The position numbers were made by a program, and so were the translations under genes. From Asterias rubens (taxonomy: Eukaryota): 64,000 nt of DNA. Where the stretch lies: positions 7,316,001-7,380,000 of the forward strand of contig NC_047074.1 of NCBI RefSeq assembly GCF_902459465.1, in the 5' to 3' direction. Position 1 is the first letter of the stretch. Each line of letters opens with the position of its first letter. Shown piece after piece: positions 10,414 through 58,180 of the stretch. The notes beneath the pieces are model-generated. The model made no database searches and was not told where the DNA came from. It worked only from the letters and a program-made list of their open reading frames with translations.

Positions 10414-10550
10414 GGGCTAGATAGCTCAGTTGGTAGAGCGCCGGCACGTTAATCCGGAGGTCGTTGGTTCGAATCCCACTCTAGTAAATTCTTTGTTCAA
10501 CCCCAAAAATCATTTCAATGTTTACCCAGTCAGTCTCGCTTATGTTTTAT
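10414..10550 (+). mobile_element. tRNA-derived SINE (truncated relatives at about 9805-9890 and 58259-58310)
   Basis: A box TAGCTCAGTTGG, B box GTTCGAATCC, near-cloverleaf head at 10415-10486, followed by a body shared with 9805-9890. Confidence 0.8.
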
Positions 10551-10745
10551 ATTGATTTCTTAATGAAGTGATACAAACAGGTTTGGGAGGAATGCTGACC
10601 ATCGGTGAATAAAGAAAATTCCAATACACCAGTCATCTGTTTATGTCAATCACTAGTGGTATGCATTGATTCCATCAGACATTCATCTAAAAAAACAAAT
10701 AATGAAAATGTCTCTATTAATATTTGCACGAATTCCCTTCAATTA

Positions 10746-23334: not shown

Positions 23335-23731
23335 TTAAAGGCACTGGACACTACTGGTAATTACTCAAAATAATTGTTAGCATTTAAAACTGACTTGGTA
23401 ACAAGCAATGGAGAGCTGTTGATAGTGTAAAACATTGTGAGAAATGGCTCCCTCTGAAGTATTGTAGTTTTCGAGAAAGAAGTAAATTTCCACTAAAATA
23501 TTTGAATTTGATTTCGAGACCTCAGAATGGGATTTTGAGGTCTCGAAATCAAGCATCTGAAAGCACACAACTTCTGATGACAAGGGTGTTTTTTCTTCCA
23601 TTATTATCTTGCAACTTCGACGGCCAATCAAGTTCAAAATTTCACAGGTTTGTTACTTTATGCATATGTTGAGATACACCAAGTGAGAGGGCTGGCCTTT
23701 GACAATTACCAAAGGTGTCCAGTGTCTTTAA
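23335..23731. mobile_element. Kolobok-type MITE family A, complete (coordinates include TTAA TSDs)
   Basis: TTAA-AGGCACTGGACAC...GTGTCCAGTGTCT-TTAA. About 25-bp TIRs, AG..CT termini and a TTAA duplication, which is the Kolobok/T2 signature. Confidence 0.9.
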
Positions 23732-23965
23732 GCACTGTCTCCTTTGACAGAGAACTGTTTGCTGAGGGGCGGGGAGAGGGAGGGGCGATTTGATAGATAC
23801 AAGACTTTTAACTGGTGCCATCCTCAGTGGTTGAACCATTCAGTGGCGATGCAGTCATTTGTAGACAGCGTGTAAACACAACCTCAATGATTAACTATAA
23901 TTGAAGGTCCATGGTCAACACTTTGTATTATGTAAGTAGGGCAATATGAATTCCAACTGGGGCTT

Positions 23966-24268: not shown

Positions 24269-26490
24269 AGTAACTTGCACAAGAAGGCAAAAACAAAACC
24301 AAGTAGTGGTGGACTAAATTTGAGATAAGAACCTGTATTACTAGCTTCAAATTAACCCTAGGAACCAGTGATAAAAGTTATGGGTGTCCCTTGCACCATC
24401 TGTACTGTACTGTTAGAATAAAAATTTACACTTTCCTCATAAAAGTGTCATTTGCCTTTGCCCTACAAGAGCAGAGTTCAAGACAGATGATGTACCCCCT
24501 ATTAATTTATTGACTGTTTACAGTTGCCATGGTTGCAAAAATGTTGCAAACAACCATGGCAACATGATGACAATAGTTTGACATTTCAACAAGGTCTCTG
24601 TGAACTTGTCTCTCGGTGGTATTTATACTGCAGTAGATACCAACGGCCTTCATTGGTCATTTAATGGTTTATGCAATGATCTGCTAGTGGTACATGTTGT
24701 GGTGCTCTAAAATTTGATCCAGATCCGGTGGGGTCTGACCAAGTTCAGGTCAGGCTGACCAGGAAACAGTTGAAAATAAAACTTTGCTTCGGATTCTGCA
24801 TCACATTGACCTGTTCCTGGGTCAAGCTGACATGGGTCAGGTTTACTGGGACCTGGGGTCGATTTCACACAGATTTAGGACTGGTCCTAACTTAGGAACA
24901 GTCCTAGAAGATATTTAAAACGTACCTTGCCTTAACCCGAGATAAGACTTGTCTTAACTCTTAGCGAATTCCAGCCTTGGGACCATTGACCTGGGTTTTT
25001 TAAGAGTGTGATACACAAGAGTTATAAGACAAGATCGTTCCCTCTTATTTTGAAGTATAGATCTTTTTATGCTGATGCAATAGACATGAACTCATTTTTT
25101 CAATCCTGACAATTTTCCCCGCCAACGTTTATTCGATTGGAAGTGTTCAAACAAGATGGTTAGAACATAGTCCAAATGAGAACATAGTTCTAATGTATTC
25201 AAAGTGAGTATAGTTCCAATACACATTGAAACTGGGACCTATAAACAAATAGGACGATTGGGTCCATGGATCGGGAAAGGTCCACAGTTGGAAAATGTGT
25301 GCAAAACCAATGGGGCTGTTGCAAAAAAAGTATAAACAAAAGAGGGACAATAGGAGGTCCACGGTTGCAGGCGTACACAAGCTTGTGTGAGTTTGGCAAT
25401 CTTCATAAGTCGAAAGGAGAATAAAACCCCCTAAAGCAGTACCCTGCATATTGCTACTCTGTTCCCACTTGATCTTTTGCTGAATCTCTGCCAAAGTCAC
25501 TGCTTGGTTTAGATTTCGTTGCAAGCTTGATTCTATGTCTGGACATTGTTCAAATGTCAAAGACATTAACGCAAAAAACAACTTTCAATTTTGACCTTTG
25601 AAAGTTTGAAGTATTTCCTTTTTCCAAATTACTTGTATTTTGTAGACAAGTTCCATGCGTGGTTTAATGTCTGTGAATAATAGGCTAGTGTTACAGTCAG
25701 GCAGAAACATAATTGTTTGTATGCAATTTGTAAATATTTCCTTTTCACCTTATATAAAAGAAACATAGGGGTATTGTGTATGCAAAAGTTTAGTCACTGT
25801 AGTTACTTTTAGCACTATTAGTACCACTCAAACAAACACATTTAAAAAAAAATAGATTTTTTGAGACTCACTTTTGGTCTTGAACAATTTAGTTGGGTCA
25901 CCAAACTTTTTCAAAAGCAGCAAGAACTATTGTCAACAAAAAATTGTATTGTTCCTTAAATTTTCCAGTTCAAAAATTTCAAATATTTATAAAAAAAAAA
26001 CAAAATGCCTCAAGAAATAGTAAGATTAGCCTCTTTTCATGATATTACCTCTACAGTAGGGAGTCCAATCAGGTATAGGTGGTGATCGTAGGATCCAGCG
26101 GTCACAGTCGAACACCTGAAATTTCACTCTGAATTGCCAGCCTAAAAGTTTGGAAACGGCTGTTCAATAGCATCAAACATACAAGGATTGCTGTAAAACA
26201 ATTTTCAATCTCTTGACTGAGGGGCTTTGACCTTTTGACAATTTTCAGACATGGAATAAGTTTCTCCCACTTAACCAGACAACCACAAGGCAGTCTAGGG
26301 GGGCCCCCAAATACTATAAATATCTCCCAATGAATCTGGTCTGACAAGGCTTAGCATATCCTTATATTGTTTCCATTTACACTGCTTATGTATTACTTAA
26401 CACCTTGACATGAAAACAAGGTTTTATACACAACAGAGTTTATTATCTGAACTCAAGAGTTATTTTAGTCAGCTCTGATGTTGATCTACA

Positions 26491-26777
26491 TTAAAAGCAC
26501 TGTACACTATAGGTAATAACTCAAAATAATTGTAAGCATAAAAACTGCTGAAGCTCCCTCTGAAGTTTTGTACTTTTTGTGAAAGAGGTTATTTCTCACT
26601 AAAATAATTGTATTGAATTTGGGTGATAGGAAAAACATGCAATTTCGAGGCATGTTTGTGTGGATAATTGTATTGTACTTTTAAAACATCTTTCTACCCA
26701 TGTGCATTGTATAACAAACGGTTACAGACGCTTTTCAAAGACCAACTCGACCGATCCAAGGCAACATGTTTCTTTAA
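26491..26777. mobile_element. Composite MITE: family A left arm plus family B arm
   Basis: 26491-26620 matches the family A end. 26636-26777 matches a family B arm. TTAA at both outer ends. Confidence 0.75.
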
Positions 26778-27505: not shown

Positions 27506-27734
27506 GGAAGACATCTTTTCAAACGTTAGTGTAGAAAAATAGAAATGTCTTTTAATCAAATCATAAAATCCCTGATTTGTCAAATAAAAACCCTCAATGT
27601 AGCACACCAACATTACCTTCGGAATTCTGTTGGTGTGCTACATTAAGGGTTTTTATTTGACAAATCAGGGATTTTATGATTTGATTAAAAGACATTTCTA
27701 TTTTTCTATACTAACGTTTGAAAAGATGTCTTCC
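27506..27734. repeat. 229-bp near-perfect palindrome (107-bp arms, 15-nt loop)
   Basis: 27506-27612 vs 27628-27734: 2 substitutions and 1 indel. Confidence 0.95.
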
Positions 27735-28036
27735 CTATTTGACGATTTCTCTCTCCCAACATTCATTGCCACCTACTATTAAGAGGAGGGTTTAGGACAC
27801 AACTCATGGGAGTATTTCTTCAGGATGTCGGGCGTTGAATGATTCCACGCTGGGCAATATTGATACAGACTTTACCCAACAGTGGAACGATTGCTGAACT
27901 GGGCTGATTCATTGTTTGGAACGATGCCAAATGTTCCATTGGCCCATATTTGGTCTGAACCAAACAACAATGCCCTACAACATTTGGGATTATCATAAAC
28001 TGGTTCATAGAAGCCCCAGCCTAAATGATGTGTGAA

Positions 28037-28425
28037 TTAAAGGCAGTGGACACTATTGGTAACTACTCAAATAATGATTATCATAAAACCTACTTGGTAA
28101 GGAGTAATGGGGAGAGGTTGATAGTATAAAACTTTGTGAGAATCGGCTCCCTCTGAAGTAATGTAGTTTTCGGGAAAGATTTGTTTTTCCACGAATTCGA
28201 TTTTGAGACCTCAGATTTAGAATTTGAGGTCTCAAAATCAAGCATCTGAAAGCACACAACTTCAGGTGACAAGGGTGTTCTTTTCTTCCATTATTATCTC
28301 GCAACTGCAATGACCAATTGAGCTCAAATTTTCACAGGTTTGGTATTTTATGCATATGTTGAGATACATCAAGTGAGAAGACTGGATTTTGACAACTACC
28401 ATTAATAGTGTCCAGTGTCTTTTAA
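28037..28425. mobile_element. Kolobok-type MITE family A
   Basis: TIRs with TTAA at both ends. Confidence 0.9.
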
Positions 28426-29242: not shown

Positions 29243-29589
29243 CTAAAGGCACTGTACCCTATTGGTAATTACTCATAATAAAGTTTAGAATAAAAACTTA
29301 CTTGGTTATGAGTAATGCAGAGCTGTTGATGGTATAAAACATTGTAAGAAACGGCTCCCTCTGAGGTAACAGTGTTTTTTAGAAAGTAGTAATTTCTCAC
29401 TAAAATATTTGCGTTGAATTTGAGAACTTAGTTGAGGTTTCGAATTCAATCATCTAAAAGCACACAACTTGTTTGACAAAGGTGTTGCTCTTCCATTATT
29501 CTCTTGCAACTTCACGACGACCAATTGAGCTCAAATTTTCACAGGTTTGTTATTTTTATGCATGTGTTGAGATACACCAGTGCCTTTAA
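29243..29589. mobile_element. Kolobok-type MITE family A with subterminal deletion
   Basis: CTAA-AGGCACTG...CAGTGCCT-TTAA. Shares its right TTAA with the next element. Confidence 0.85.
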
Positions 29590-29970
29590 AGGAACAACAG
29601 AATTGGTCAGACACAAAATCGTGAAGATCACAGATTTACATCAAACTTACGTGGTCTAATGATGATGATAGTAGAAAATAACCCTTGAAATATTTCTGTC
29701 TGAAATGTCATATTTGATGAGAAATAAATAATCTAATTTCACATTTGGAGTTTATTGCTCAGTGAGAGTTTTATTCATTTTTTTGTTTGCATCAATGTCA
29801 TAAAAAAAAGTGTAATTAGGTTTTTCACTATTTTCTCGTGACCCAGATGGCCGATTGATCTCAAACTTCTACAGGTGTGTCAGTTTATGAATATGGTGGA
29901 CTACATAAAGTGCTTACACTGCCAGCCACTTTTCTTTATTAGCAAAAACCAATTCTGTAATGTTCCTTAA
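29586..29970. mobile_element. Kolobok-type MITE family C
   Basis: TTAA-AGGAACAACAGAATTGG...CCAATTCTGTAATGTTCC-TTAA. Reverse complement of 36217-36587. Confidence 0.88.
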
Positions 29971-32900
29971 ACTACCAATAAACTCTCAGGAATGTAGCGG
30001 GTCCAAAGTAAAGTCCTAATTGTGTCAACTGAGCCATCATCACAACATAACTACAGTGTGTCTTATCAGATGAAAGTTGATTTCAAACATCAATGTTTCT
30101 CAATCAACTGATCAGCCTATCCATGATTTTGCAATTCATCTGTTCTGTCTTGCTTTCTACTCACCGACAATCAATTCACTTGTGCACTGGCCTCCCCACA
30201 ATCAAGAAACATTGTCTGCTTCTCTCAATTTAGTCTTCCAAGCTTCTAAAATGGATTTGACAATCTTCAGTATTTGAAACATAATATTGCCACCATGACC
30301 AAAACAGTTCTCACAGTACAGAAACGTTCTCCAAAAGGATAATCATTACGGCCCTCACCAACAGATCCATGCCCTTGAGCATTCACAAGCAACTTAGGCA
30401 CTAACGCGTGGGAAGGGCTTTTACTTCAACTTAAGGCAATATAACATCACAGACTGGGACAAAAGGCAGTCACAGACCAGCCACAGACGGAGAAAGAAAG
30501 AAAGAAATCCTTTGCTTTTTCACAGGAACTACAAAGGAACGTTGTTGCTTCTTTTGAAACGGCCTGGCACTCCTCTGGGACAATTAACAGCGTATATCTT
30601 TTATTTGTGTCTGGGCCAAGACTTGGACAGCACGGCCCGTGGGGTTTTCTCTAACAGAAACAGGATAGGTCTAACAGGTTTTTTGTACTTTTTTTTCCCG
30701 AAATCAAATTCTCACTCGTTCAGTTTCTCTTTATGAAAGTTCTTTCATCGTTTGCCATTCCCTCGGTTTAAGAGGGAACACTCTTGGCGATAAGCTGACC
30801 CGAGATTCAAAAACCTGTCAAATAGCATTTCACTGGTGCATCAATATTCAAACTCTGTTCTTCTCAATAGAAAAGCTTAGGGTCCGTATCTGACGTCTTG
30901 GTTACCCTGAAGCGTACAAAGCAGGAACAACAAGATTTGCCGTTGAAATTCCTGCGTGTGGGGGCCGTATAAAAACAAGCACAATGAGAAAGGAAAAAAA
31001 GGCATTGTGTAGTTTGTGGTAAACTTCTTTTTGCTTTCGTAAAGAGATTTAGAGTTTTCACTTTTAGCAGTGAACCTTGCAAGAATTCACACATTTGTTT
31101 GTATACCATGAAAATAATGTTTGTGTGCTGGGATAAATTTGTTTCAAATTCATGAAGAATTTTTCACAAATCTGGGTGAGTAGATTCTGATATATTCTGA
31201 TTCATTACTGTGGCTAAAAACTTAACCAAAACTGTGTCTAAGAAACTAACGAAAACTTTACAAAGAAACCCACATATACCCTAACTGATTTCTATGATAA
31301 ACAAGACATATATTTCTTCATTTTCTATGTTCGTTGTTTGATTATTGACAACAAAAATATTTGTCTCCAACTTCTGATCTACAAAGGTAATGGGAGAAAG
31401 CCTTCCAATTATTCAAACAAGCTGGTTACTATATGCTGAGAACAATCGTTCAAAACAATTTATAAATTGGAGGGGCCCAAAATCCCTTTCGCTCAGGTAT
31501 AAGGCCCAAAGAGGCTTAGAAAACTTCATCATGCACTGGGCAGCTGCCATAGGCGGTTTGAATAAGAACACTTGCCATTGGTCTCCTGTGCAGTAATAAG
31601 AATTAAACATCAATAAATTAAACAGCCAATGAAATAATTTGTTACTGCCGAGTTATCCGCTAAAACGAGCATAAGAAAAAAAACAAGGATTTAAAAGCAG
31701 GAAAAAGAAGTTTGTGTGAACTTTATTATGAGCTTTTCAGCATTTGGAATGTCCATGAGTTTTGTGCTTGCGTGTGTGGCTCTAAAAATGGCAGATAATG
31801 GGAAACTTCCACACCCTACATGCAGAGAATGTCCCCTAAACAACCTATTTCTGCAACCAAAATGTCACATAAGAATTTAGCTTACTGAAAACACTAAATT
31901 ATTCATTTTCCTCAACATTTCTTACCCAAACAAGCTAAAAATTACCAGTTGTGCTTTAGACCGGGACAAAAAAAGTTGTAAAAAAAATGTCTATGAAAGC
32001 ATGGCTAGCCATGTGCGACGACTTCACATGTTTCGTTTGTGTTTGGCTGTATGCAACTTAGCGCGGAGAAATCATAAAGCGTGGAAAATCTGCGCACCTG
32101 TGCACAGGTAAATCCCAAATGGTTGGGTAATCAGTGCTATCACGTAAAGCACCAATACATGCTTGACCTTTTACTATTGTACTCTGCAGAGATCAGACAT
32201 TCAAGTTTTCATTTGAACAAGTTATTATGTTTTCTGAGCAATATTACACCACTATGTTTTGATTGATAATGACATGAAATAAATGTATCTGAAATGAAAA
32301 AAATTCCCATCCATTGCATCTGGTATAGAAGACACCAAACAAACTTGGTGCATAAAGTAAAATTAAAAGTGGAACGTTCGCAAATAATGCACGTTTTAAT
32401 ATTAGCAGGTACAACTATATACTTATTTTCCTTTTTTGCCAGGACACTTTGTGTTTTAAGTACTCAGTACTTCCCCGAATCCCTGTAAACAAAGCCAACA
32501 CCTATCACTTTGATGTTACATTAGTTCAAAGAGCTGCTGAAGAATGGACCATTGATAAACGGAGTAAATTCCAACTGTTTTTCTTCCTAAAGAAACGGGT
32601 TAACAGACCAATGTATTGTAGAGTTGGTCCCCGGTCCCAGGTAACTGTTTTCTTTCAGAGGTTTGAAGTACATGTACAATCTAGTAGCGACGGCACAGTT
32701 GTACGGTTTAACATCAACACTTGAGCACATATTCAAAAGGGGGCCACTGGCCCAGATGATTGCTATCAACATTTAAACAAAATTTCATCATTTTGACCAA
32801 GAACTTGTCCAGGGGTCGGGAACACTGACCTACAAAAAGTGAAGATTTGATGGAAGTACTGAAAACACATCCACAGATGTTGTTTTTATTGACTGAGCAG

Positions 32901-33225
32901 ATGTCTCCCTAAGACTGTACCCATGCTGCAACCATCATCATATTATTCAATAATCATCAAAAGTGATTCTCAATTACCAGGAGAAAAAAAAAAAACCCAA
33001 GTTTGGTTTCATTGATTTGAAGAGAAAGAAGACAAAATAGCCGGTCATTGGATACAATTTATTACCACAACCCACGAGTTAACATAACAATGTTTACAAC
33101 TTTTCCAGTCACCATGATTGGACATTTTTTCACCAGAATATTCAACCTATTTCTAGAGACCAGCCATGACGGCTCAGACTAGAAGATGTCACTTGTCATA
33201 CTTCTGTCATATGTCTGATAAAGTA

Positions 33226-33435
33226 AAGCCCCTTTCACACAAACACAATTTAGCAAGGGTCCTTTGCTAAATTGTAACAATGTTGTACAATTTTACAAAA
33301 TGTACCTCGTGTAATAGGACAGCAATTTGTCTACCGTCCAAGTTCTTTTGCAAAAGCTGGTCAAACCTTGCTATATTTTACATCTATGCTAAAATTAAGC
33401 AAAGGACCCAAGTTAAATTGCTGCTGTGTGAATAT
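33226..33435. mobile_element. Degraded MITE (AAGCCCCTTTCACAC end); arm fragment also at 17358-17412
   Basis: Internal inverted match CAATTTAGCAAGGGTCCTTTGCT / AAGCAAAGGACCCAAGTTAAATTG. Confidence 0.5.
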
Positions 33436-34129
33436 TTATCATAAGCCCATGCTAAGTATAAAAAATACCTGTGGATCAAATACATCTAGCAAATAGTATG
33501 TTAATGTGAATGATCCTGAATGGTTAATTGCTTATAATGTAAAAGTTTCAGAAAACAAATGTTGTAATAACAAAATTATTAAAACAAAAACAATCACAAA
33601 TATTGATATATAAAATTTATGTGAATCACAATCTCTTATTGCGACACAATCCAAATCTTTACAAAAACCGCCCGAGGAAAAAAGCAAACAAACAAACTGA
33701 AAACCCGTAGATTGACGGTGGGAATCAGTTGATGAAAGCATTAAACATTCCATAGATATTGTTACTTCATCGGCATCAGGAATTCTCAGAGGTAAAAGGT
33801 TAAAGGTTATCAAACTGTATCTTGAAAACTCTCTAATCCAAAATGCAAATATCAAGCAGGAAAAAACAACATTCAGAAAAAAAAACGTTGTTTCAGTTTC
33901 AGGGGCAAATGTTGTCATGCATATTGAAAAAGATTACATTCAAGAAATCTGCGATGAACATTGAATGTAACACAGATTTGTTGATGATGGTCAACATGGA
34001 GCAAAACTTCTTCTTTCATTAACTACTTAAGCAGGTGAGCTGGGGGGGCGGGGAGAAACAACAAGTTGTTGGCTTGGCAAAATAACAAACAATGAACTCA
34101 AGAAATTGGAAACAAAAATGCGGACCTAC

Positions 34130-34291
34130 CTTGAGGGAATCAAAGCAAGCTGTGACCCGTCCGTTCTCCACCACGACTGACTTGGCCGGGTGCGCGTACT
34201 TGCACTCGGTGTCCGATCTCTTGCATGCACCACGCTGGAACTCACGACAGGCCTCGAGCATAAGCCACTGTGTGTCTCTGACTACAGCCAT
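34130..34291 (-). CDS. mbnl: Muscleblind-like protein, first coding exon (54 aa: CCCH zinc finger 1 plus start of zinc finger 2)
   Basis: Translation [54 protein letters not shown] matches the muscleblind N-terminus (RDxxWL.LE.CREFQRG.C.R.D.ECK.AHP...ENGRV.ACFDSLK). ATG at 34291-34289. Phase-0 donor AAG|GTAGGT at 34130/34129, the intron position conserved in fly and vertebrate orthologues. Confidence 0.95.
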
Positions 34292-35013
34292 AATGAAGCG
34301 GCAACAACCGCCACAGTCCAAGTTGGCTGGATCAGCTCAATAGTGAGGGAGTCTCAAGCACTAGGTTCGCTGGCACGTACTCACAATTCACGTGGTGTTT
34401 TCCACAAGGGGGGGGGGGGGGGTGGCAAGGGGGGTTCTAGAAGGGGGATTTATTGTTGTTATTGATGGCTGGCTTGGTTATGGGGCAGTGCTTTTTCTGT
34501 ACACTGGGGTCACAGGTCAACGCCAAGGCTTCCTTCTTGTGGCCGGGATTCCGAGTGAAGTTCAGTGAATGAGTGATTTCTGTCTGGCAACAATGCAGTG
34601 CACACCGGTACACAACAGTAGCAAGTGGTACACACTGTGCATGAGTGCTCTCTGTGTCACACCAGGCAAGTCTAAGGCAGCATGTAATTTAACGGGCTGG
34701 CAAGCTGACCACGCATAGGGGGTATAAGAAATATTGGAGGAAAAAAACAACACACGGCAAGAACAGTGAGTTTTGCTTGGGGTTGCCAAATACTAAAAAA
34801 AACTTCAAAGTTCAGAGGCCATCGATTGACAAATCTCAGGTGGCGGTGGGAACTTCATGAAGCAGGGTCGTCCACAGCGATGGTAATGGTGACGTCAACA
34901 ACATAGACAGGCAAAAAATACTGGTGATGCTAATGCTATAAAACCCAAATTATTTAGTCCATGAGCGCGGGCCGATTGGGTAAAGAAACTAGTAGCGGTT
35001 GGTAGCGTTGGTA

Positions 35014-35037
35014 GGCAGGCAAGCAGGCAGGCAGGCA
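35014..35037 (-). repeat. Six tandem UGCY units (CCUG-type tract) in the mbnl 5'UTR
   Basis: Plus strand GGCA GGCA AGCA GGCA GGCA GGCA. Confidence 0.95.
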
Positions 35038-36216
35038 AACCAGGGTTGTAGTGTGCAGTGTGTGGGTGGTGTGCTAAGAGAGAGCGGTAGGTTGTTGAAG
35101 GCAACGGCAGCGGGTGTTCGTTTCTACTGTCCTTGGACTTGGCCAGCCAGGAGCTAGAGTTTTATTTGTTTCCAGTCCTGTGGGGGAACACACAGACAAA
35201 AGACGGGCACAGGGGGAGAGGGAAAGAGACACAAGAGAAAGGAGAGAAAAAAAGAAAAGCATGCATGAGCTCAAGTGAGGTGAAACTAAATCAAAAACAG
35301 CAAGCAGCATTTTTTATCAATCCGTTACCAACCTTTGATGTTGCCCTTTTTTACAAGGTCAGAGGCAAAGCTTTTTGTATTGGCTTCAGCTTATAGACAG
35401 AGTTTGACACCTCTCTGGTCCAATAAAATCAAGGATAGCATTCTTTCTGTCAGGTATAAATGCACCGGTTGGGGCTTAAAATCTGACTTACATATTTTTA
35501 TACTTAGAACAACACAATCGTGGATTTAGTTTATCCAGTCAAATGGAATAACAAACCCAAAACACCTTGAATCTAAACATGAATTACTTCTGCTTGTTTT
35601 TCCGCATGCCCAAATGTTCCCCATCCAAAACCAATCATGAAAACAAATTCGAGAGACTTTTCCAACAAAGAATTGTTCAAAAGAAAAAGAAAACCCACCC
35701 TTGTACAACATTTTGCATTTTGTAAACCATGCATGATAAGAAATGAATGCAGGATCTGGAGTGGAGCACATGTAAAATAAACATGTTATCCAGGGAGACG
35801 TCCCCCTTACTACATGCATGATGAATTTAAACATGAAGTCTAGGTACTATACATCATCCAATGTTAGCAACAAACTATTTAAATAAGCTATGTATGAGAT
35901 GATAGCCCTAAGAAATACATTTCTAAAATGTGTGTTTCAAATGTTTAATAAACCGAATATGAAATTCTCTTTTTGAAATCTTGTTCTACTAAATTAACTT
36001 ATAAAAAAAAACAGAACATCTTTTCATTAGTTATTAAAGGGAAAATACTACAAATTTATTATGAATAGGCATTAGTCTTGATGGATCAATCTTTGACCTA
36101 GACCCCACGTGTACCAATCATCACTGCATGATTTTCATTACTTGGAAAAGAGGGCCAGGCTATATTTGTTCCCGCCAGCCTTGGTTTTCTCACAATGATT
36201 TGAAAAAAAAATAAAC

Positions 36217-36587
36217 TTAAAGGAACATTACAGAATTGGTTTTGCTTACAAAGCAGTTGCTGGCAGTGTAAGCACTCTATGTATTCCACCATATATACAC
36301 TGACAAACCTGTAGAAGTTTGAGATCGATCGGCCATCTGGGTCACAAGAACATAGTGAAAAACCGATCACACATTTTGCATGACATCGATGGAAGACAAA
36401 AAAATGAATAAAATGCTCCCTGAGCGATCAACTCCAAACGTGAAATTAGATTCAGATTTATGACATTTCAGTTATAAATATTTCAAGGGGTGTTTTCTAC
36501 TATCATCATCATTAGACGGCGTAAGTTTTAAGTAAATCTGTGATCTTCACGATTTTGTTTCTTACCAATTCTGTAACGTTCCTTTAA
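36217..36587. mobile_element. Kolobok-type MITE family C, opposite orientation to 29586-29970
   Basis: 20-bp TIR AGGAACATTACAGAATTGGT / ACCAATTCTGTAACGTTCCT with TTAA TSDs. Confidence 0.9.
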
Positions 36588-36851
36588 ACACCATGATAAC
36601 AACATCATTGTCACTTAAGACTACACGCCCTTCTAACCGGCAACATACTTTTTCCAGTAAAAAAAGTCGTATGCAATCCAATGGCTCCTGACAAGAAAAA
36701 AATGTCTGTTGCATTTTTGTTGCTAGAACTACACCAATGAGAAGTGTTCCCATTTCACAGGCAACATTTAACCCTCCTCTGATGACTAATGAATGGCAGA
36801 AAACCAAACAAACTTTCACACACAGTTATTCTTGAAACACACTTTTGAACA

Positions 36852-37219
36852 TTAAAGGGAAGGTACACGTTTGGCAATTACTCAAAACAAATAATAACTT
36901 AAAAACTGACTTAGTAACGAGCAGTGTAGAGCTGATGGTACATGTAGTATAATACATTGTGGGAAACGACTCCCTCTGAACTAACACAGTTTTTGAGAAA
37001 GAGGTAATTTCTCACAAAAAAAAAGAAGAAAATTCTAGCTAGAAGTCTTTTCTTCCTATCTGAAAGCACACAAATTCGTCCAACAAGGGTGTTTTTTCTC
37101 TCATCATTTTCTCACAAATTCAATGACCAATTGAGCCCAAGTTTCACATATGCTTGTTATTTTACACCAAGTGAGGACACTGGTCTTTGACAATTACCAA
37201 ACGTTTACAATGCCTTTAA
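36852..37219. mobile_element. Kolobok-type MITE family A, subfamily A2
   Basis: TTAA-AGGGAAGGTACACGTTTGG...CCAAACGTTTACAATGCCT-TTAA with a family A body. Confidence 0.85.
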
Positions 37220-38591
37220 TTGCTTATAAATGCACTTTCTATGGTAGCTTTGTTACATCCTTTCCACGCACACAAAGTCACGGTAGACTGCTACGCTTCT
37301 AGCAGATTTAAGACATTTTTTGGTGAAAAAAAAAAGACTAATCCAAAGCTTCTATTGAACCCAAAACAAGACAATCTAAACATCAGAAAGTAAATCTGAA
37401 CTGGGGAATTACCCATGATAAGAGACCAGTTTTCAATAATAATGTTTCTTTTCATCAAATAGACCAACCCACGACCAACTTGCATCTCAACATTTGATAG
37501 GACCTTATTGTCTAAATTGGACTTTGGAATACACTTTTAAAATAAATCAACAACTTACCCACTGTTTACCTATTATATTTAAAACAAATTTCATAACAAT
37601 AACAATAAACCTTAATTACAAAATTGAACAATCCTCTCTGCAACACCAGGAATAAAAAAATAAAATAAAAAAAATATTTCTATGATAAAAAAAAATAAAA
37701 AAACCACCAGCAGTGGCCAAAATAATGAATTAAGCAGGTAATTCAACAAGTATAGATTCTGATTATATAAATGTGTATCTATTCCAATCACTTAAACTAT
37801 TATAATATTATGAGCGCTGTGGTTGAATCTCTCTCCACAGTGGTCAAGTCTAGACAAGCTGACCTAACATTCAAATGAACCCGTTGCCATGGTTGCAGCC
37901 GGGTAGGGTAAGAAAAGAAGCAGCAAAGAAAACCTGGAGGCAGGTCAACCACCTGACCAGGGAAAAAAAACCTCAGGGGAAACCTCGGAAATACCCATCA
38001 AAACGGATCAAATTGAAGACACTATCTAATTTATCTTCTTTTTCTTTAAAGTCCACGAGTGTTGGAGCATACCCCAGGGTTGAAATACATGCAAAACCGA
38101 TTGTTTGCACGGACCAACCAACGGGATAGGGAAACTTGCTTTCAATTGTACAAAAGGAGAGAAAAATGCGGGGGGGGGGGGGGGGGGGGGAAATGTAATT
38201 AAGGGAGACCTGTGTGTACAGTGTCAAGCAAACTGAATACTTTGCCTATGAGTGCCCAGAGGCATTTGTGGCCATTGTGGCTGTTTAACATTGGATAGCA
38301 GCAATTCCTTGACCTTATGAGGACAATGACTAGACCACTTGGGGGCACAGACTACTACTGCTACTGCCAAAGTATCTAGCCACACAGTGCTAATAACTGC
38401 TTATTTACATGAGCAAAGTGGCCCCTTGATATGTTTAGAGAACTACTAGTCTATTCTTAATCACTTTTAGATCTTAGACTGTGGCCCAAGGTTCCTCAGG
38501 GGGTAAGCCCATATTGCTAGAAGACTTAGTGTCCTCCAAACATCAGCCCCTTCCAAGCCTTATCAAAACCCTGATCCAATCTTCAATGTCA

Positions 38592-38947
38592 TTAAAGACA
38601 CTGGACAAAGACCAGTCTTCTCACTTCTCAACATATGCATAAAAAAACATGTGACAATTTGAGATCAATTGGTCATCGAAGTTGCGAGAGAAAAATGAAA
38701 GAAAAAACACCCTTGTCACACGAAGTTGTGTGCTTTCAGATGCTTTATTTCGAGACCTTTAAATTCTAAATCTGGGGTATCAAAATCAAATTCGTGGAAA
38801 ATTACTTCTTTCTCGAAACATTACTTCAGAGGGAGCCGCTTCTCACAATGTTTTATACTATCAACCTCTCCCCATTACTTGTTACCAAGAAATGTTTTAT
38901 GCTAATAATTATTTTGAGTAATTACCAATAGTGTCCACTGCCTTTAA
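38592..38947. mobile_element. Kolobok-type MITE family A
   Basis: TIRs with TTAA TSDs. Confidence 0.9.
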
Positions 38948-39138
38948 TCTCAAACCACCAAATGTATTCACAAAGATAAAATAATCCTCACAACTTGTTG
39001 TGGCCAAGCTAGCAAGCCCTACAGTTACACAATACTATTCAACAAGTAATGTTTAATTTACCCTAGGAGTGTTTGAAAACAGGGTGGTTCCATATTCTTG
39101 TGCAGAGATGACAAGAACATTAAAAGGGTCCTCATCTG

Positions 39139-39743: not shown

Positions 39744-40068
39744 TTAAAGGCAGTGGACACTATTGGTAATTACTCCAAATAATTTTTAGCATAAAACCTC
39801 ACTTGGTAATGAGTAATGGGTAGATGCTGATGGTATAGAACATTGTGAGAAACGACTCCCTCAATGAAGTAATGCAGTTTTTAAGAAAGAAGTAATTGTT
39901 CATGAATTTGAATTCAAGACAAGGTGTTTTTTTCTTTCGTTATCATCTCGCAACTTCGACCACTGATTGAGCTCAAATTTTCACAGTTTTTTGTTTATGT
40001 ATACGTTGAGATACACCAAGTGAGAAGACTGGTCTTTGACAATTACCAATAGTGTCCAGTGTCTTTAA
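39744..40068. mobile_element. Kolobok-type MITE family A, central deletion
   Basis: TIRs with TTAA. Lacks the central palindrome. Confidence 0.9.
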
Positions 40069-40451
40069 GGTTTCTCAGATTGAACCACCAATCCCCATAA
40101 TCAAAGCTGTCTTTATTGGACCAAAGTGATCTGAAATTAAGCCCAGATGTTACACACGCACTTGCCCCTTGAACATTCTACTGTAACTCCCACATTACCA
40201 ACTCACTGACCTTCCCAACTAGGGTTAGGCTGCCCAGGGCAAACGGGTATCCTTACCCTATGATTGGTTCAAAGCACATCATGTGACTTGAGATGGAACT
40301 TCAATCGTAAAAACATCTGTGTGTTCTGATGGTCAGGCCAGTCGGGCCATCATCAGCTTTGTAATCCAGACCTATATTAGGCTTCAAACTAAGGGATGGG
40401 GCCATGGGGGTTAGAGTCCAACCACATTACAACTCCTGTCACTTCTCTTTC

Positions 40452-40839
40452 TTAAAGGCACTGGACACCTTTGGTAATTGTCAAAGACCAGTCTTCTCAC
40501 TTGGTGTGTCTAAACATATGCACAAAATAACAAACCTGTGAAAATTTGCGCTCAATTGGTCGTCAAAGTTGCAAGATAATAATGAAAGAAGAAAAAACTC
40601 TTGTCACACAAAGTTGTGTGCTTTCAGATGCATGATTTGGATACCTCAAAAATCTAATTCTGAGGTCTCGAAATCAAATCCGTGAAAAATTACTTCTTTC
40701 TCGAAAACTACTCCACTTCAGAGGGAGCCGTTTCTCACAATGTTTAATACTATCAACCTCTCCCCATTACTCTTTACCAAGAAAGGTTTTATGCTAATAA
40801 ATATTTTGAGTAAATACCAATAGTGTCCACTGCCTTTAA
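40452..40839. mobile_element. Kolobok-type MITE family A
   Basis: TIRs with TTAA TSDs. Confidence 0.9.
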
Positions 40840-42235
40840 AGTGCTGTCCTGTGAATAGGGCTTATGAGCTCATGTGTAACAAACTGAAGTCATATAACAA
40901 GTCAACAAAAGTCACTCTATTAACTTTACTGGAGTTTTAATCAATCTTAGTTAACGACCTAGCTCACAGTCAGGTAATGCATAGGTTTCTCTTGATTTCT
41001 GTTTTAGACGTGAGTGGTTAATAATAGCAGGTTTCCACACCTGTCCATTGACATAACAGAGACAACAAAAGTGCTTCATTTTAATGAGCCATGTTAATCC
41101 TTGCTATGGCAGCTGTTTTTAACAGGTTGTGTAAAAAGTGTGATATTCGGTCTTAAATGTTGAATAAAGCTTTATTGTCAGCCATTTCACAAAAGGTTTA
41201 TTCCAATACCTCTATAGACAGTTGAATGGTGGAGCAATCAGTGCTGATACACAATTACTAAGCACAGTCAAGTTTCAATTGGCTTTATTAGTAAAAAAAA
41301 ACCAGGGTCCCTTGTCAAAGCTTGTCCAACATTGCTACATTTTGTCAGTGGTCCGGACCTACGACAAATTCTTACACTAGCGGAAGTTTTGACCAAGGAC
41401 GTGGGCTACATCATCGTGTGAAAGGAACCCTTGTTTATTGAACGACGTCCTAGGTGAAAATGCCCATTCAGCGCATGCTATTGTTGGTGCTATCTTGTCC
41501 AACTATGGTGATCAGGATTACCAATTCGTCATATCACTCTCATGGCGCACAAGGGTTGTTAGTTTTTTTTTTAACTTTGCAGTGTGAAAGCTCACAAAAT
41601 CAGTCACACATAGTGATAACAAATAAACAATCCACGCTCATAAATTTTGTAGCAAGGGACACTGGCTACGTTTTTGCAGTCTGAAAAGGGCTTTACAGAT
41701 CTGCTAATCTCACACAACTTTTTTGTTCTTCCACAACAAAGAGCTAAACTAAACATCCAGACAATACATCATGAAGAAGGTGACAATAATTGAAGAAAGC
41801 CTTTCCACCAGACAAATAAAACCCACACATCACACCCTGCGAAGAAAGGGCGTGACAATTACCTATAAATCTCATCATAAGAGTCAGCAGGCTCGTAAAT
41901 ATCTCTCTCCCTAGTGCTTGGTCATGGTGTCCTTATTCAACATTCATTTCAAAAGATTTTGTTTTATGGGAGGTTAGTTCAAATTTACAAGAGGGGGGGG
42001 GGGATTCAGGGAAGTAGTAAACTAAATGTGAAAATTGAGACATAAGAGGTTGAGGGGTTGTTAGAAACGCTCGTGATTTGTAGCTCCTTTTTGCAATGAG
42101 AAGGAAATGACAAAGATATAAACCTAATGACTGCCTTGATGTCTTAGCTTTGTGCACTATTGGCCCCAAGAACCTTTCTTATTCTTTTTCTTTATTTGGC
42201 CATTAAACAATAACAAATACGAGCAGACAGTTTGC

Positions 42236-42620
42236 TTAAAGACACTGGACACTATTGGTAATTGTCAAAGACTAGTCTTCACAGTTGGTGTGTCTCAACA
42301 TATGCATAAAATAACAAACCTGTGAAAATTTGAGCTCAATTGGTCGTCGAAGTTGCGAGAGAATAATGGAAGACAAAAACACCCTTGTCGCACAAGGTGT
42401 GTGCTTTCAGATGCCTTGAATTCGAGACTTCATCTGAGGTCTCAAATTCAATTTGAATATTTTAGCGAAAAATTCCTTTTTCTCAAAACCCATGCAACTT
42501 CAGAGGGAGCCGTTTCTCACAATATTTTATACCATCAGCAGCGCTCCATTTTACGTTACTGAGTATTTTTTATACTGATAATTATTTTGAGTAACTATCA
42601 ATAGTGTTCAGTGCCTTCAA
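42236..42620. mobile_element. Kolobok-type MITE family A
   Basis: TTAA-AGACACTGGACAC...GTGTTCAGTGCCT-TCAA. Confidence 0.88.
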
Positions 42621-44381: not shown

Positions 44382-44794
44382 TTAAAGGCAGTGGACACTA
44401 TTGGTAATTGTCAAAGACCACAGTGGACACTATTGGTAATTGTCAAAAGTCTTCTTACTTGGTGTATCTCAACATATGCATAATAACAAACCTGTGAAAA
44501 TTTTAGCTCAATTGGTTGTCGTAGTTCCGAGATAACTATGAAAGAAAAAAACACCCTTGTCACACGAAGTTGTGTGCTTTCAGATGCTTGATTTCGAGAC
44601 CTTAAAATCTATTTCTGAGGTCTCAAGATCAAATTCATGGAAAATTACATCTTTCTCGAAAAATACGTTTTTTCAGAGGGAGCCGTTTCTCACAATGTTT
44701 TATACCATCAACCTCTCCCTATTACTTGTCACCAAGAAAGGTTTTATGCTACTAATTATTTTGAGTAATTACCAATAGTGTCCACTGCCTTTAA
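44382..44794. mobile_element. Kolobok-type MITE family A with duplicated left TIR
   Basis: TIRs with TTAA. CAGTGGACACTATTGGTAATTGTCAAA occurs twice (44389 and 44421). Confidence 0.9.
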
Positions 44795-45962: not shown

Positions 45963-46245
45963 TTAAAGGCACTGGTCACTATTGGTAATACTATTAGCAT
46001 AAAAAACTTACTTGTTAAAGAACAATGGAGAGCTGTTGATAGTATAAAACATTGAAAGACACAGTTTTGGGGAAAGAAGTTATTTTCCACTAAAATATTT
46101 GAATTTGATTTTGAGACCTCAGAATTCGAAATCAAGCATCTGAAAGCACACAACTTCATGTGACAAGGGTGTTTTTTCTTTCATTATTATCTCGCAACTT
46201 CAAAACGACCAATTGACAATTATCAAAGGTGTCCAGTGTCTTTAA
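45963..46245. mobile_element. Kolobok-type MITE family A, several internal deletions
   Basis: TIRs with TTAA TSDs. Confidence 0.88.
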
Positions 46246-46427
46246 GAAAGAACCAACTATTTTATAATACAACCATTCCTATGCTTTTGAGAAAAAAAAC
46301 TGGTACATTTTCAAGATGGAAAGTCCACGAAAACATTTTGTTTTTAACCAGTTGTCTTTTAGGTTTGCATGTATAATATGATATGGAAAGGGTTGCACTA
46401 ACACCATGTAATGACTATCTCTAATGA

Positions 46428-49752: not shown

Positions 49753-49874
49753 TACTTACCGGTAGAGTCGAATTACTAATTTGCATATTCCCTATGCCGC
49801 GAGGCAAAAACGCTAAGACTTTCACACACAATAGCGCCCTCCACCGCCCTACCCATAACGCCCGCGACATGCCC
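49753..49874 (+). repeat. DIRS 3' inverted terminal repeat
   Basis: Reverse complement of 53558-53680 with 2 substitutions and 1 indel in about 122 bp. Confidence 0.95.
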
Positions 49875-53557: not shown

Positions 53558-53680
53558 GGGCATGTCGCGGGGCGTTATGGGTAGGACGGTGGAGGGCGCT
53601 ATTGTGTGTGAAAGTCTTAGCATTTTTGCCTCGCGGCATAGGGAATATGCAAATTAGTAATTCGACTCTACCGGTAAGTA
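53558..53680 (-). repeat. DIRS 5' inverted terminal repeat
   Basis: Reverse complement of 49753-49874. Confidence 0.95.
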
Positions 53681-56601: not shown

Positions 56602-57580
56602 TCCAGACAGTCGTGAAAGACAACTCCCGAACAGTGTCAACTTCTCATCAAAAATCAATATGCGTGCATATGAAATAGCGGAATAGCGGCCTGGACAGTT
56701 AGAGAGGACCGGAGGAAGAGTGAGCTGTGGAGAGAGAGAGTGGGCTGTTGCAGCAGCCGGGCTCCAACCCCCTTAGGCAATCATTTTAACTGTCTTCCAC
56801 GCCACATTATTAAAAGTACGATTTCCACTCTGCTTCTCCAAGACATTTTATGCATTACAAGAAGGTGAAGAAAAAAAAATGAAAGGCAAAGGGGACAAAA
56901 AAAGAAGAGTTTCTTCTCAGTTTTTATCTTGAACCAGGGAGACAGGATGATATTGCACATCCTGCATATTTCAACGGTTCTAAAGGGCTCGTTTGGCATT
57001 GGGTTTCACTCAATCCGTGTCAATGATATGCCCTGCATGTCTTGGGCTGTCTACAGCCTGAAAGACCAAGGTGTCCCATGTTGGGCTTCGTGTTGGCTGT
57101 GATCCTCTACTCGCTGGTGACCCAGATTCGCATGGAACAATTCAGCTATTCTGCCCAACCGGGGATGTATGTGACGAGCTCCGACGGTGAACATTAGAAG
57201 GCCGGTGCGTGAGGACAAGTCGCTACCAAGTCTTAACGCCACGCGCTCAATAATAAGATCTGTCTGGCAAATGGCCTAAGTACTGCATCATCCGTCTCAG
57301 GTTGGGTCAGCCGTACTTTACGCAAATATTAATCATGAAAATAATTAGGGCTCATAATCAATAGCCATGTCAGAAAACTACAACAGAAACCAGTGCTATT
57401 CATTCTGCGTTGAAGTCTCCAGTGTCGTTGAGAGAAGCTCATGTTCTAAAAGCCCGCTTATAAAATAATCTGACACTGACTTCTTGCAAGTAACGTAAAA
57501 CTTCTACAAGAGGGAATAATTAGTTTCATGGACATAATTTTGTTTTATTATCGATCATTGATAAATAGTCATAATGTACA

Positions 57581-58180
57581 AAGTATTGAGTATACAGTGC
57601 TGACACACATCGGTGTATGGGTAAAATCCAAAATGAATATTCTTTATCCCCAAAGCAAATTTAACATCTATATTATCGCTGCGGTACCCGCTGCCAAAAC
57701 AAAGGATTCGAACTGCCTCTAGCTACCGGGCAATCTCGGTAGTCTAGTTGGTAAGACACTGCTCTAGAGTTGCAAGGGTCGTGGGTTTGAATCCCACCCG
57801 AGTAATATGCCTGTGATATTTTTTCACAGGACTCGGAAAAGTACTGAGTATACAGTGCTAACACACATTGGTGTATGGGTAAAATCCAAAATTAATATTC
57901 TTTATCCCCGATGCAAATTTAACATCTATAATATCGTTGCGGTACCCGCTGCCAAAACAAAGGATTCGAACTGCCTCTAGCTACCGGGCAACCTCTGTAG
58001 TCTAGTTGGTAAGACACTGCTCTAGAGTTGCAAGGGTCGTGGGTGCGAATCCCACCCGAGTAATATGCCTGTGATATTTTTTCACAGGACTCGGAATAGT
58101 ACTGAGTATACAGTGCTAACACACATTGGTGTATGGGTAAAGTCCAAAATTAATATTCTTCATCCCCAATGCAAATTTAA
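57581..58180 (+). repeat. Tandem array of a 258-bp unit (about 2.3 copies) containing tRNA-like Pol III heads
   Basis: AGTA(T/C)TGAG recurs at 57582, 57840 and 58098, and GCGGTACCCG at 57681 and 57939 (period 258). tRNA-like heads at 57733-57804 and 57991-58062, each followed by a T6 run. Confidence 0.9.

What the first reader, a model, noticed from the sequence alone, without database searches (positions are those of the whole stretch)
29586..36587. Inverted MITE pairs bracket the circMbl-homologous exon: possible MITE-driven back-splicing
Seen: family C copies at 29586-29970 and 36217-36587 are reverse complements and flank the exon, about 4.2 kb and 1 kb away. Family A copies on the low-coordinate side (23335, 26491, 28037, 29243) share one orientation, while 38592, 40452, 42236 and 44382 are opposite. 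Known: reverse-complementary intronic repeats (Alu in primates) promote exon circularisation, and the equivalent muscleblind exon circularises in fly and human. Inference: DNA-transposon MITEs may play the Alu role here. Intra-intron inverted pairs such as 38592/39744 could compete.
Basis: partly seen in the sequence, partly recalled or inferred. Interest (0 to 1): 0.7.

Follow-up and report, generated by a model that had tools for sequence, protein, structure and literature searches.

The report
Inverted transposon pair around muscleblind exon
Two mirror-image copies of a small jumping gene do flank the first coding exon of a sea-star muscleblind gene and could pair in the RNA, but such pairs are common in this transposon-filled genome and no RNA circle was seen, so this is an untested idea.

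Summary
The sequence observation holds. Family C copies at 29585-29971 and 36217-36588 are reverse complements (84% over 390 nt). They flank a minus-strand muscleblind (mbnl) exon at 34130-35177. RNA contigs and homology to human MBNL1 zinc finger 1 (E 3e-26) confirm that exon. As RNA the arms could form about 330 bp (-474 kcal/mol). They are the closest complementary pair across the exon and have no same-intron competitor in the window.

The family A pattern was overstated. The high-coordinate side holds 4 minus and 3 plus copies, and each minus copy has a closer partner in its own intron.

The arrangement is not special:
- Both families occur at about genome-average density here.
- A random 1-kb segment has an equal or better flanking pair (≥300 nt) 8-10% of the time.
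- Any pair ≥100 nt within 5 kb turns up 26-41% of the time.
- Each arm resembles dozens of unlinked copies (85-90%) more than its partner, so there is no sign of selection for pairing.

Back-splicing was not shown. My single read-laying run was swamped by MITE reads and is inconclusive. MBNL-motif enrichment in the flanking introns was absent.

Verdict: these are real, ordinary MITE insertions around an exon likely to circularise. MITE-driven back-splicing is plausible and of a known kind, but untested.

The parts
34130..35177 (-). mbnl (muscleblind) first coding exon, 1048 nt. It holds an 886-nt 5'UTR, the ATG at 34291-34289 and 54 codons (zinc finger 1 plus the first half of zinc finger 2), ending in phase 0 after DSLK.
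   Evidence: RNA contigs of X2 run through both boundaries into neighbouring exons (table 8).
35178..35179 (-). 3' splice site (AG) of the upstream intron, preceded by a long pyrimidine tract.
   Evidence: Sequence read. The contig piece ends at 35178.
34128..34129 (-). 5' splice site (GT; AAG|GTAGGT) of the downstream intron.
   Evidence: Sequence read. The contig piece starts at 34129.
36217..36588 (-). Family C MITE, the arm in the upstream intron, 1040 nt from the acceptor. Flanked by TTAA.
29585..29971 (+). Family C MITE, the arm in the downstream intron, 4159 nt from the donor. It abuts the TTAA at the end of the family A copy 29244-29584.
23335..23732 (+). Family A MITE, full length, downstream intron.
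26490..26620 (+). Family A MITE, partial copy.
28036..28422 (+). Family A MITE, full length.
29244..29584 (+). Family A MITE with an internal deletion near its 3' end.
36851..37219 (+). Family A-like MITE, divergent (69%), in the upstream intron and in the same orientation as the low-side copies.
38606..38951 (-). Family A MITE.
39744..40069 (+). Family A MITE with an internal deletion. It is a within-intron partner for 38606 (gap 797) and 40451 (gap 382).
40451..40839 (-). Family A MITE.
42222..42620 (-). Family A MITE.
44420..44794 (-). Family A MITE.
45963..46246 (+). Family A MITE, partial.

Best explanation
This is the first coding exon of a sea-star muscleblind gene, the equivalent of fly mbl exon 2 and mammalian MBNL1/2 exon 2. 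Its introns are very long: the downstream one is about 53 kb. Like the rest of this genome, they are peppered with roughly 390-bp TTAA-flanked MITEs that have terminal inverted repeats.

The two family C copies are old, independent, neutral insertions that happen to lie in opposite orientation on either side of the exon. In the pre-mRNA they can form a stem of about 330 bp that would loop out the exon. Any help this gives to back-splicing would be an unselected by-product, as proposed for young transposons in mammals. The family A copies on the upstream side would mostly pair among themselves.

Shown here: the repeats, their pairing potential, the exon and its boundaries, and the chance expectation. 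Inferred: neutrality, and any effect on splicing.
For: - The repeat pair is real, and only two family C copies lie in the window.
- The genome holds thousands of copies: at least 3909 and 3485 first-look candidates for family C, and at least 7422 for family A.
- An unbiased sample gives 35 A and 3 C copies per 180 kb, so the locus is only about 1.5-1.8 times denser than average.
- A flanking inverted pair of equal or better geometry occurs at 8-10% of random positions. Any pair of at least 100 nt within 5 kb occurs at 26-41%.
- Each arm is 85-90% identical to dozens of unlinked copies but only 84% identical to its partner. Neither arm appears among the other's 40 best genomic matches.
- Family A orientation is 10 plus to 8 minus in the window.
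- The X2 contigs run straight through both exon boundaries into the neighbouring exons, which is the linear mRNA.
- Sea-cucumber circRNAs show no bias for complementary flanks (PMC6614181).
Against: - The family C pair is the closest significant complementarity across the exon. It has no within-intron competitor in the window.
- It forms 331 bp in the minimum-energy fold of the 7.2-kb pre-mRNA segment.
- This geometry is the one that promotes circularisation in mammals (Zhang et al. 2014, as cited in PMC4647462 and PMC9352392).
- The orthologous exon is circularised in fly, mouse and human (PMC9352392).
- My read test could not exclude a circle.
- The null rests on only 244 kb of sequence and is very uneven between regions (0 to 0.97).
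Confidence: 0.65

Rival explanations
1. MITE-driven back-splicing. The family C arms pair in the nascent transcript, possibly helped by family A pairs across the exon. Pairing brings the donor at 34130 next to the acceptor at 35177 and measurably raises production of a 1048-nt circMbl-like circle. The MITEs would play the role that Alu elements play in primates.
For: - The arms can form 330 bp at -473.7 kcal/mol, with a dimer-minus-monomers energy of -289 kcal/mol.
- The stem is present in the 7.2-kb minimum-energy fold.
- There is no competitor for family C in the window, and there are 13 family A pairs across the exon with loops up to 21 kb.
- The downstream intron is about 53 kb, so the forward splice partner is transcribed long after both arms.
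- The orthologous exon circularises in fly and mammals (PMC9352392).
- Lineage-specific transposons form the dimers at circRNA loci shared between mammals (PMC8516420).
Against: - No back-splice joint appeared among the joints listed, although that test was inconclusive.
- The arms lie 1.0 and 4.2 kb from the splice sites.
- The arrangement is expected by chance.
- There is no locus-specific conservation of complementarity.
- Reads show no excess of A>G or T>C changes. In X21, A>G 39 and T>C 26 stand against G>A 38 and C>T 43. Those reads come mostly from paralogous copies, so this is weak evidence.
- Fly circMbl does not depend on repeats.
- Sea-cucumber circRNAs are not enriched for complementary flanks (PMC6614181).
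Confidence: 0.22
2. The exon is circularised as in Drosophila, through long flanking introns and muscleblind protein binding to its own transcript. The MITEs are bystanders.
For: - The exon is orthologous and has the same architecture: long 5'UTR, ATG and zinc finger 1.
- The downstream intron is about 53 kb.
- The exon has the highest sense-strand YGCY density in the window, 30.5 per kb against 9.9 overall. It includes a run spaced every 4 nt at exon positions 141-161.
- The fly mechanism is described in PMC9352392.
Against: - YGCY in the exon is only modestly above the dinucleotide expectation (32 observed, 25.6 expected, z 1.8).
- The flanking 500-1000 nt of intron are not enriched (z 0.3 to 1.5). 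In fly the flanking introns carry the binding sites.
- No circle has been observed here.
Confidence: 0.3
3. The exon is not circularised at any appreciable level in this animal. The intronic stem, if it forms at all, is only a substrate for ADAR editing or is removed with the introns.
For: - The X2 contigs pass unbranched through both exon boundaries into the neighbouring exons (table 8).
- Depth over the exon in X21 is about 10 and even.
- No junction-spanning protein entries were found.
Against: - Contigs drop rare variants.
- The libraries used may be poly(A)-selected.
- The protein database held no entry from this species at all, so that blank says nothing.
- The circle is conserved from fly to human (PMC9352392).
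Confidence: 0.4

Closest known systems
Inverted Alu (IRAlu) and other reverse-complementary-match circRNA loci of mammals and nematodes (Jeck 2013, Zhang 2014, Ivanov 2015, as cited in PMC4647462 and PMC9352392; transposon dimers in PMC8516420)
   Same: Copies of one high-copy repeat family lie in opposite orientation in the two introns flanking an internal exon. They can form a long RNA duplex, and within-intron pairs compete with across-exon pairs.
   Different: The repeats are TTAA-flanked DNA-transposon MITEs, not SINEs. The host is an echinoderm. No circle has been shown, and the arms lie 1.0 and 4.2 kb from the splice sites.
circMbl (Drosophila mbl exon 2) and circMBNL1/2 of mammals (Ashwal-Fluss 2014, via PMC9352392)
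   Same: The exon is orthologous. It has a long 5'UTR, the start codon and the first CCCH zinc finger, ends at the conserved DS(L/I/M)K boundary, and lies in very long introns. It also contains a CCUG/YGCY-like tract.
   Different: The fly circle is driven by MBL binding sites in the flanking introns, and I found no such enrichment here. The circular product itself was not observed.
Transposon-associated circRNAs in plants (reverse-complementary transposon pairs in maize, bioRxiv 10.1101/100578; MITE flanks in rice, PMC4647462)
   Same: Both propose that transposons, including MITEs, supply the complementary flanks.
   Different: In rice only 72 of 2354 circRNAs had MITEs on both flanks. That warns that co-occurrence alone is weak evidence. 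These are plants, not animals.

Membership tests
Repeat-paired (reverse-complementary-match) circRNA locus | A back-splice junction joining the exon's donor to its own acceptor exists in RNA. | tested here: inconclusive
   no 'goes back' joint between 34130 and 35177 was among the 15 joints shown. Another 238 joints were hidden because MITE reads flooded the table. Exon depth was about 10 in X21 and 0 in X22 and X23.
Repeat-paired (reverse-complementary-match) circRNA locus | Reverse-complementary sequences are present in both flanking introns. | tested here: met
   84% over 390 nt, 330 bp, -473.7 kcal/mol. The X2 contig shows the upstream exon lies beyond 37400 and the next coding exon lies 53 kb downstream, so both arms are intronic.
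Repeat-paired (reverse-complementary-match) circRNA locus | Pairing across the exon is favoured over pairing within one intron. | tested here: met
   It is met for family C, which has no other copy in 64 kb. It is not met for family A, where the upstream-side copies have same-side partners at gaps of 382-1417 nt against loops of at least 9 kb across the exon.
Repeat-paired (reverse-complementary-match) circRNA locus | Circularisation depends on the repeats. | not testable with these tools
   This needs deletion, minigene or natural-polymorphism experiments.
circMbl / circMBNL1 orthologue | The exon carries the 5'UTR, the start codon and zinc finger 1, with the conserved 3' boundary. | tested here: met
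   The match to MBNL1 has E 2.9e-26, the ATG is at exon position 887 of 1048, and homologues from other animals all read through into the intron right after DS(L/I/M)K.
circMbl / circMBNL1 orthologue | Muscleblind binding motifs are clustered in the flanking introns. | tested here: not met
   YGCY counts in 500-1000 nt of either flank fall within the shuffle expectation (z 0.3-1.5).
circMbl / circMBNL1 orthologue | The flanking introns are long. | tested here: met
   the next zinc-finger exon is at C14:7296635-7296718, about 53 kb downstream. The upstream intron is longer than 2.2 kb, but its full length is not known.
MITE (non-autonomous DNA transposon with terminal inverted repeats and a TTAA target) | Short length, terminal inverted repeats, flanking TTAA and high copy number. 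| tested here: met
   most copies start TTAAAGG and end CCTTTAA. Lengths are 372-400 bp. There are thousands of genomic copies. I did not assign a superfamily (piggyBac-like or Kolobok-like).

The most novel reading that the evidence does not exclude
In sea stars, TTAA-type MITEs act as the lineage's Alu equivalent. The ancient muscleblind exon-2 circle, known from flies to humans, would then be produced here through pairing of the family C MITE arms. That would be an invertebrate-deuterostome example of lineage-specific DNA transposons sustaining a deeply conserved circRNA locus.
Probability: 0.2. Interest if true: 0.55.

Novelty: new member of a known kind. Interest (0 to 1): 0.3.

Why it matters
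If circles from this exon exist and depend on the MITE arms, an echinoderm and a DNA-transposon family would join the model in which each lineage's own repeats create circRNAs at the same host genes. It would also give a clean test case: one competitor-free pair next to a circRNA conserved from fly to human. As it stands, the locus shows only that this genome's MITE load makes such pairs common. Co-occurrence alone therefore carries little weight.

Tried and rejected
1. Read laying over 32400-37400 with three raw RNA runs and one contig run. Including the MITEs was a mistake. Depth on them was 500-2500, against about 10 on the exon, and the joint and loose-end tables filled with repeat artefacts.

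2. Editing check from the same call. There was no excess of A>G or T>C changes, but the reads on the MITEs come from paralogous copies, so it says little.

3. Search for junction-spanning ORFs in the protein collection, using the exon peptide as query. It returned only intron read-through ORFs from other species and nothing from this genome, so the blank means nothing.

4. Orthologous locus through P0001, at 85% identity. No DNA was available.

5. A second batch of random genome regions for the null.

6. Short unique complementarity nearer the splice sites. The best match was 13 nt, equal to the best among shuffles, so I rejected it.

7. Muscleblind-site clusters in the flanking introns. They were not enriched.

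8. Local enrichment of MITEs at this gene. It was only about 1.5-fold, so I rejected it as special.

9. Orientation bias of family A. The split was 10 plus to 8 minus, so I rejected it.

10. Literature on starfish circRNAs. None was found.
Full report
**What is there**

The window is G000:C14:7316001-7380000 of a 417.6-Mb genome. Earlier follow-up notes of this scan call it a sea star, and I did not test that. From memory, the size fits the Asterias rubens assembly.

On the minus strand, 34130-35177 is an exon of 1048 nt:
- It has an 886-nt 5'UTR, an ATG at exon position 887, and 54 codons running from MAVVRDTQW to DSLK.
- The peptide matches human MBNL1 zinc finger 1 at E 2.9e-26 and Pfam zf-CCCH_10.
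- In run X2, one RNA contig enters the exon at 35178 after 347 nt that lie elsewhere. Another leaves it at 34129 into 841 nt that lie elsewhere (table 8).
- These are the linear exon1-exon2 and exon2-exon3 junctions. They fix the boundaries at the AG and GT seen.
- Homologues from other animals all read into the intron right after DS(L/I/M)K, so the boundary is conserved.
- The next zinc-finger exon lies at C14:7296635-7296718, which makes the downstream intron about 53 kb (no such exon lies in the window).

This is the exon that forms circMbl in flies and circMBNL1/2 in mammals (PMC9352392).

**The repeats**

Family C:
- 29585-29971 and 36217-36588 are reverse complements, 84.4% identical over 390 nt, and the only copies in the window.
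- Both are flanked by TTAA and have terminal inverted repeats of about 20 nt.

Family A:
- It is an element of about 400 bp with TTAAAGGCACTGGACAC-type ends, present 18 times in the window.
- The upstream side also holds 36851-37219 (+), 39744-40069 (+) and 45963-46246 (+), so it is 4 minus to 3 plus.
- The window overall is 10 plus to 8 minus.

**Pairing potential**

- In pre-mRNA sense the family C arms form 330 bp at -473.7 kcal/mol.
- In the minimum-energy fold of the 7.2-kb segment from 36700 down to 29500, 331 bp form between them.
- They are the closest across-exon pair: 1040 nt from the acceptor, 4159 nt from the donor, with a 6246-nt loop. They have no same-side partner.
- No shorter unique complementarity lies nearer the splice sites than shuffles give.
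- Family A offers 13 across-exon pairs with loops of 9-21 kb.

**Is it more than chance?**

No.
- Nine random 20-kb regions hold 35 family A and 3 family C copies. That is 12.4 and 1.1 per 64 kb, against 18 and 2 here.
- Scaled up, this implies tens of thousands of A copies and several thousand C copies genome-wide. The first-look candidate counts of at least 7422 and at least 3909 are consistent with that.
- A random 1048-nt segment has an inverted pair of at least 300 nt in the same geometry at 7.7% of positions in random regions and 10.4% in this window.
- Within 5 kb on both sides the figures are 13% and 24%. For pairs of at least 100 nt they are 26% and 41%.
- Each family C arm is 85-90% identical to dozens of unlinked copies but 84% identical to its partner. 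Neither is in the other's top 40.
- They are therefore old, independent insertions, with no sign of gene conversion or selection for complementarity.

**Is the exon back-spliced?**

This remains unknown.
- My one read-laying run covered 32400-37400.
- Reads from MITE paralogues gave depth of 500-2500, against about 10 on the exon in X21 and none in X22 and X23.
- They filled the joint and loose-end tables. No joint between 34130 and 35177 was among the 15 shown, and 238 were hidden.
- That the X2 contigs run unbranched through both exon ends is weak evidence against a dominant circle in that library.
- Changes in reads show no A>G or T>C excess, but those reads are mostly paralogous.
- A protein-database search for a junction-spanning ORF found nothing from this species at all.

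**Rival mechanism**

Fly circMbl relies on MBL sites in the flanking introns.
- Here YGCY is densest in the exon itself: 30.5 per kb against 9.9 overall, with a tract spaced every 4 nt at exon positions 141-161.
- That is only z 1.8 above the dinucleotide expectation, and the flanks are not enriched.

**Context from the literature**

- Complementary transposons in flanking introns are an established route to circRNAs.
- In mammals, even shared circRNA loci use lineage-specific young transposons (PMC8516420).
- MITE flanks were examined in rice and found at only 72 of 2354 circRNAs (PMC4647462).
- Sea-cucumber circRNAs showed no bias for complementary flanks: 321 of 3952 had them (PMC6614181).
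- I found no paper on sea-star circRNAs.

**Verdict**

The arrangement is what this MITE-rich genome produces by chance, and nothing yet shows a circle, let alone that a circle depends on the MITEs.

My estimates:
- About 0.6 that the exon circularises at some level.
- About 0.2 that the family C pair contributes materially to it.

Noticed in passing
window 27506-27734: A near-perfect hairpin: 107-nt arms, 98% complementary, 15 nt apart, inside the downstream mbnl intron. It could be a foldback element or a long-TIR MITE, and it would form intramolecular dsRNA.
   Followed up: no
window 33235-33425: A repeat of about 190 nt with inverted ends (TAGCAAGGGTCC ... GGACCC-type), 700 nt from the exon's donor. 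It is single-copy in the window but has very high depth in RNA contigs (X2 depth about 3600). It is probably another abundant MITE or SINE.
   Followed up: partly
window 10415-10487, 57733-57805, 57991-58063 (+): Three tRNA-like matches (Rfam RF00005, 37-47 bits). They lie inside or next to intra-window repeats (10457-10554, 57580-58180), so they are likely tRNA-derived SINE heads rather than tRNA genes.
   Followed up: no
window 34410-34430: A G run of about 13 or more (a C run in the mRNA) in the 5'UTR. Both RNA contigs of X2 end beside it (34370 and 34466), so it breaks assemblies.
   Followed up: no
window 29579-29585: The family C copy sits exactly at the terminal TTAA of a family A copy. 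Reads (table 5c, joint 37200 to 36217, 45 reads) suggest that A-end/C-start adjacency recurs elsewhere in the genome. That would fit repeated reuse of the TTAA at element ends.
   Followed up: partly
window 49753-49874 and 53558-53680: 123-nt inverted repeats at 97.6% identity bracket the GC-rich block at 50-54 kb.
   Followed up: no
window 35150-35177 with 34130-34291: If the exon were circularised, the ORF from the ATG would run 7 codons past the junction and then stop, giving 61 aa in total. I read this from the sequence. It is the subject of a separate first-reader note.
   Followed up: no
G000:C14:7258111-7261175 (-): Further zf-CCCH_10 matches lie 20 kb beyond the zinc finger 3/4 exon on the same strand. 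They may be extra mbnl exons or a tandem paralogue.
   Followed up: no
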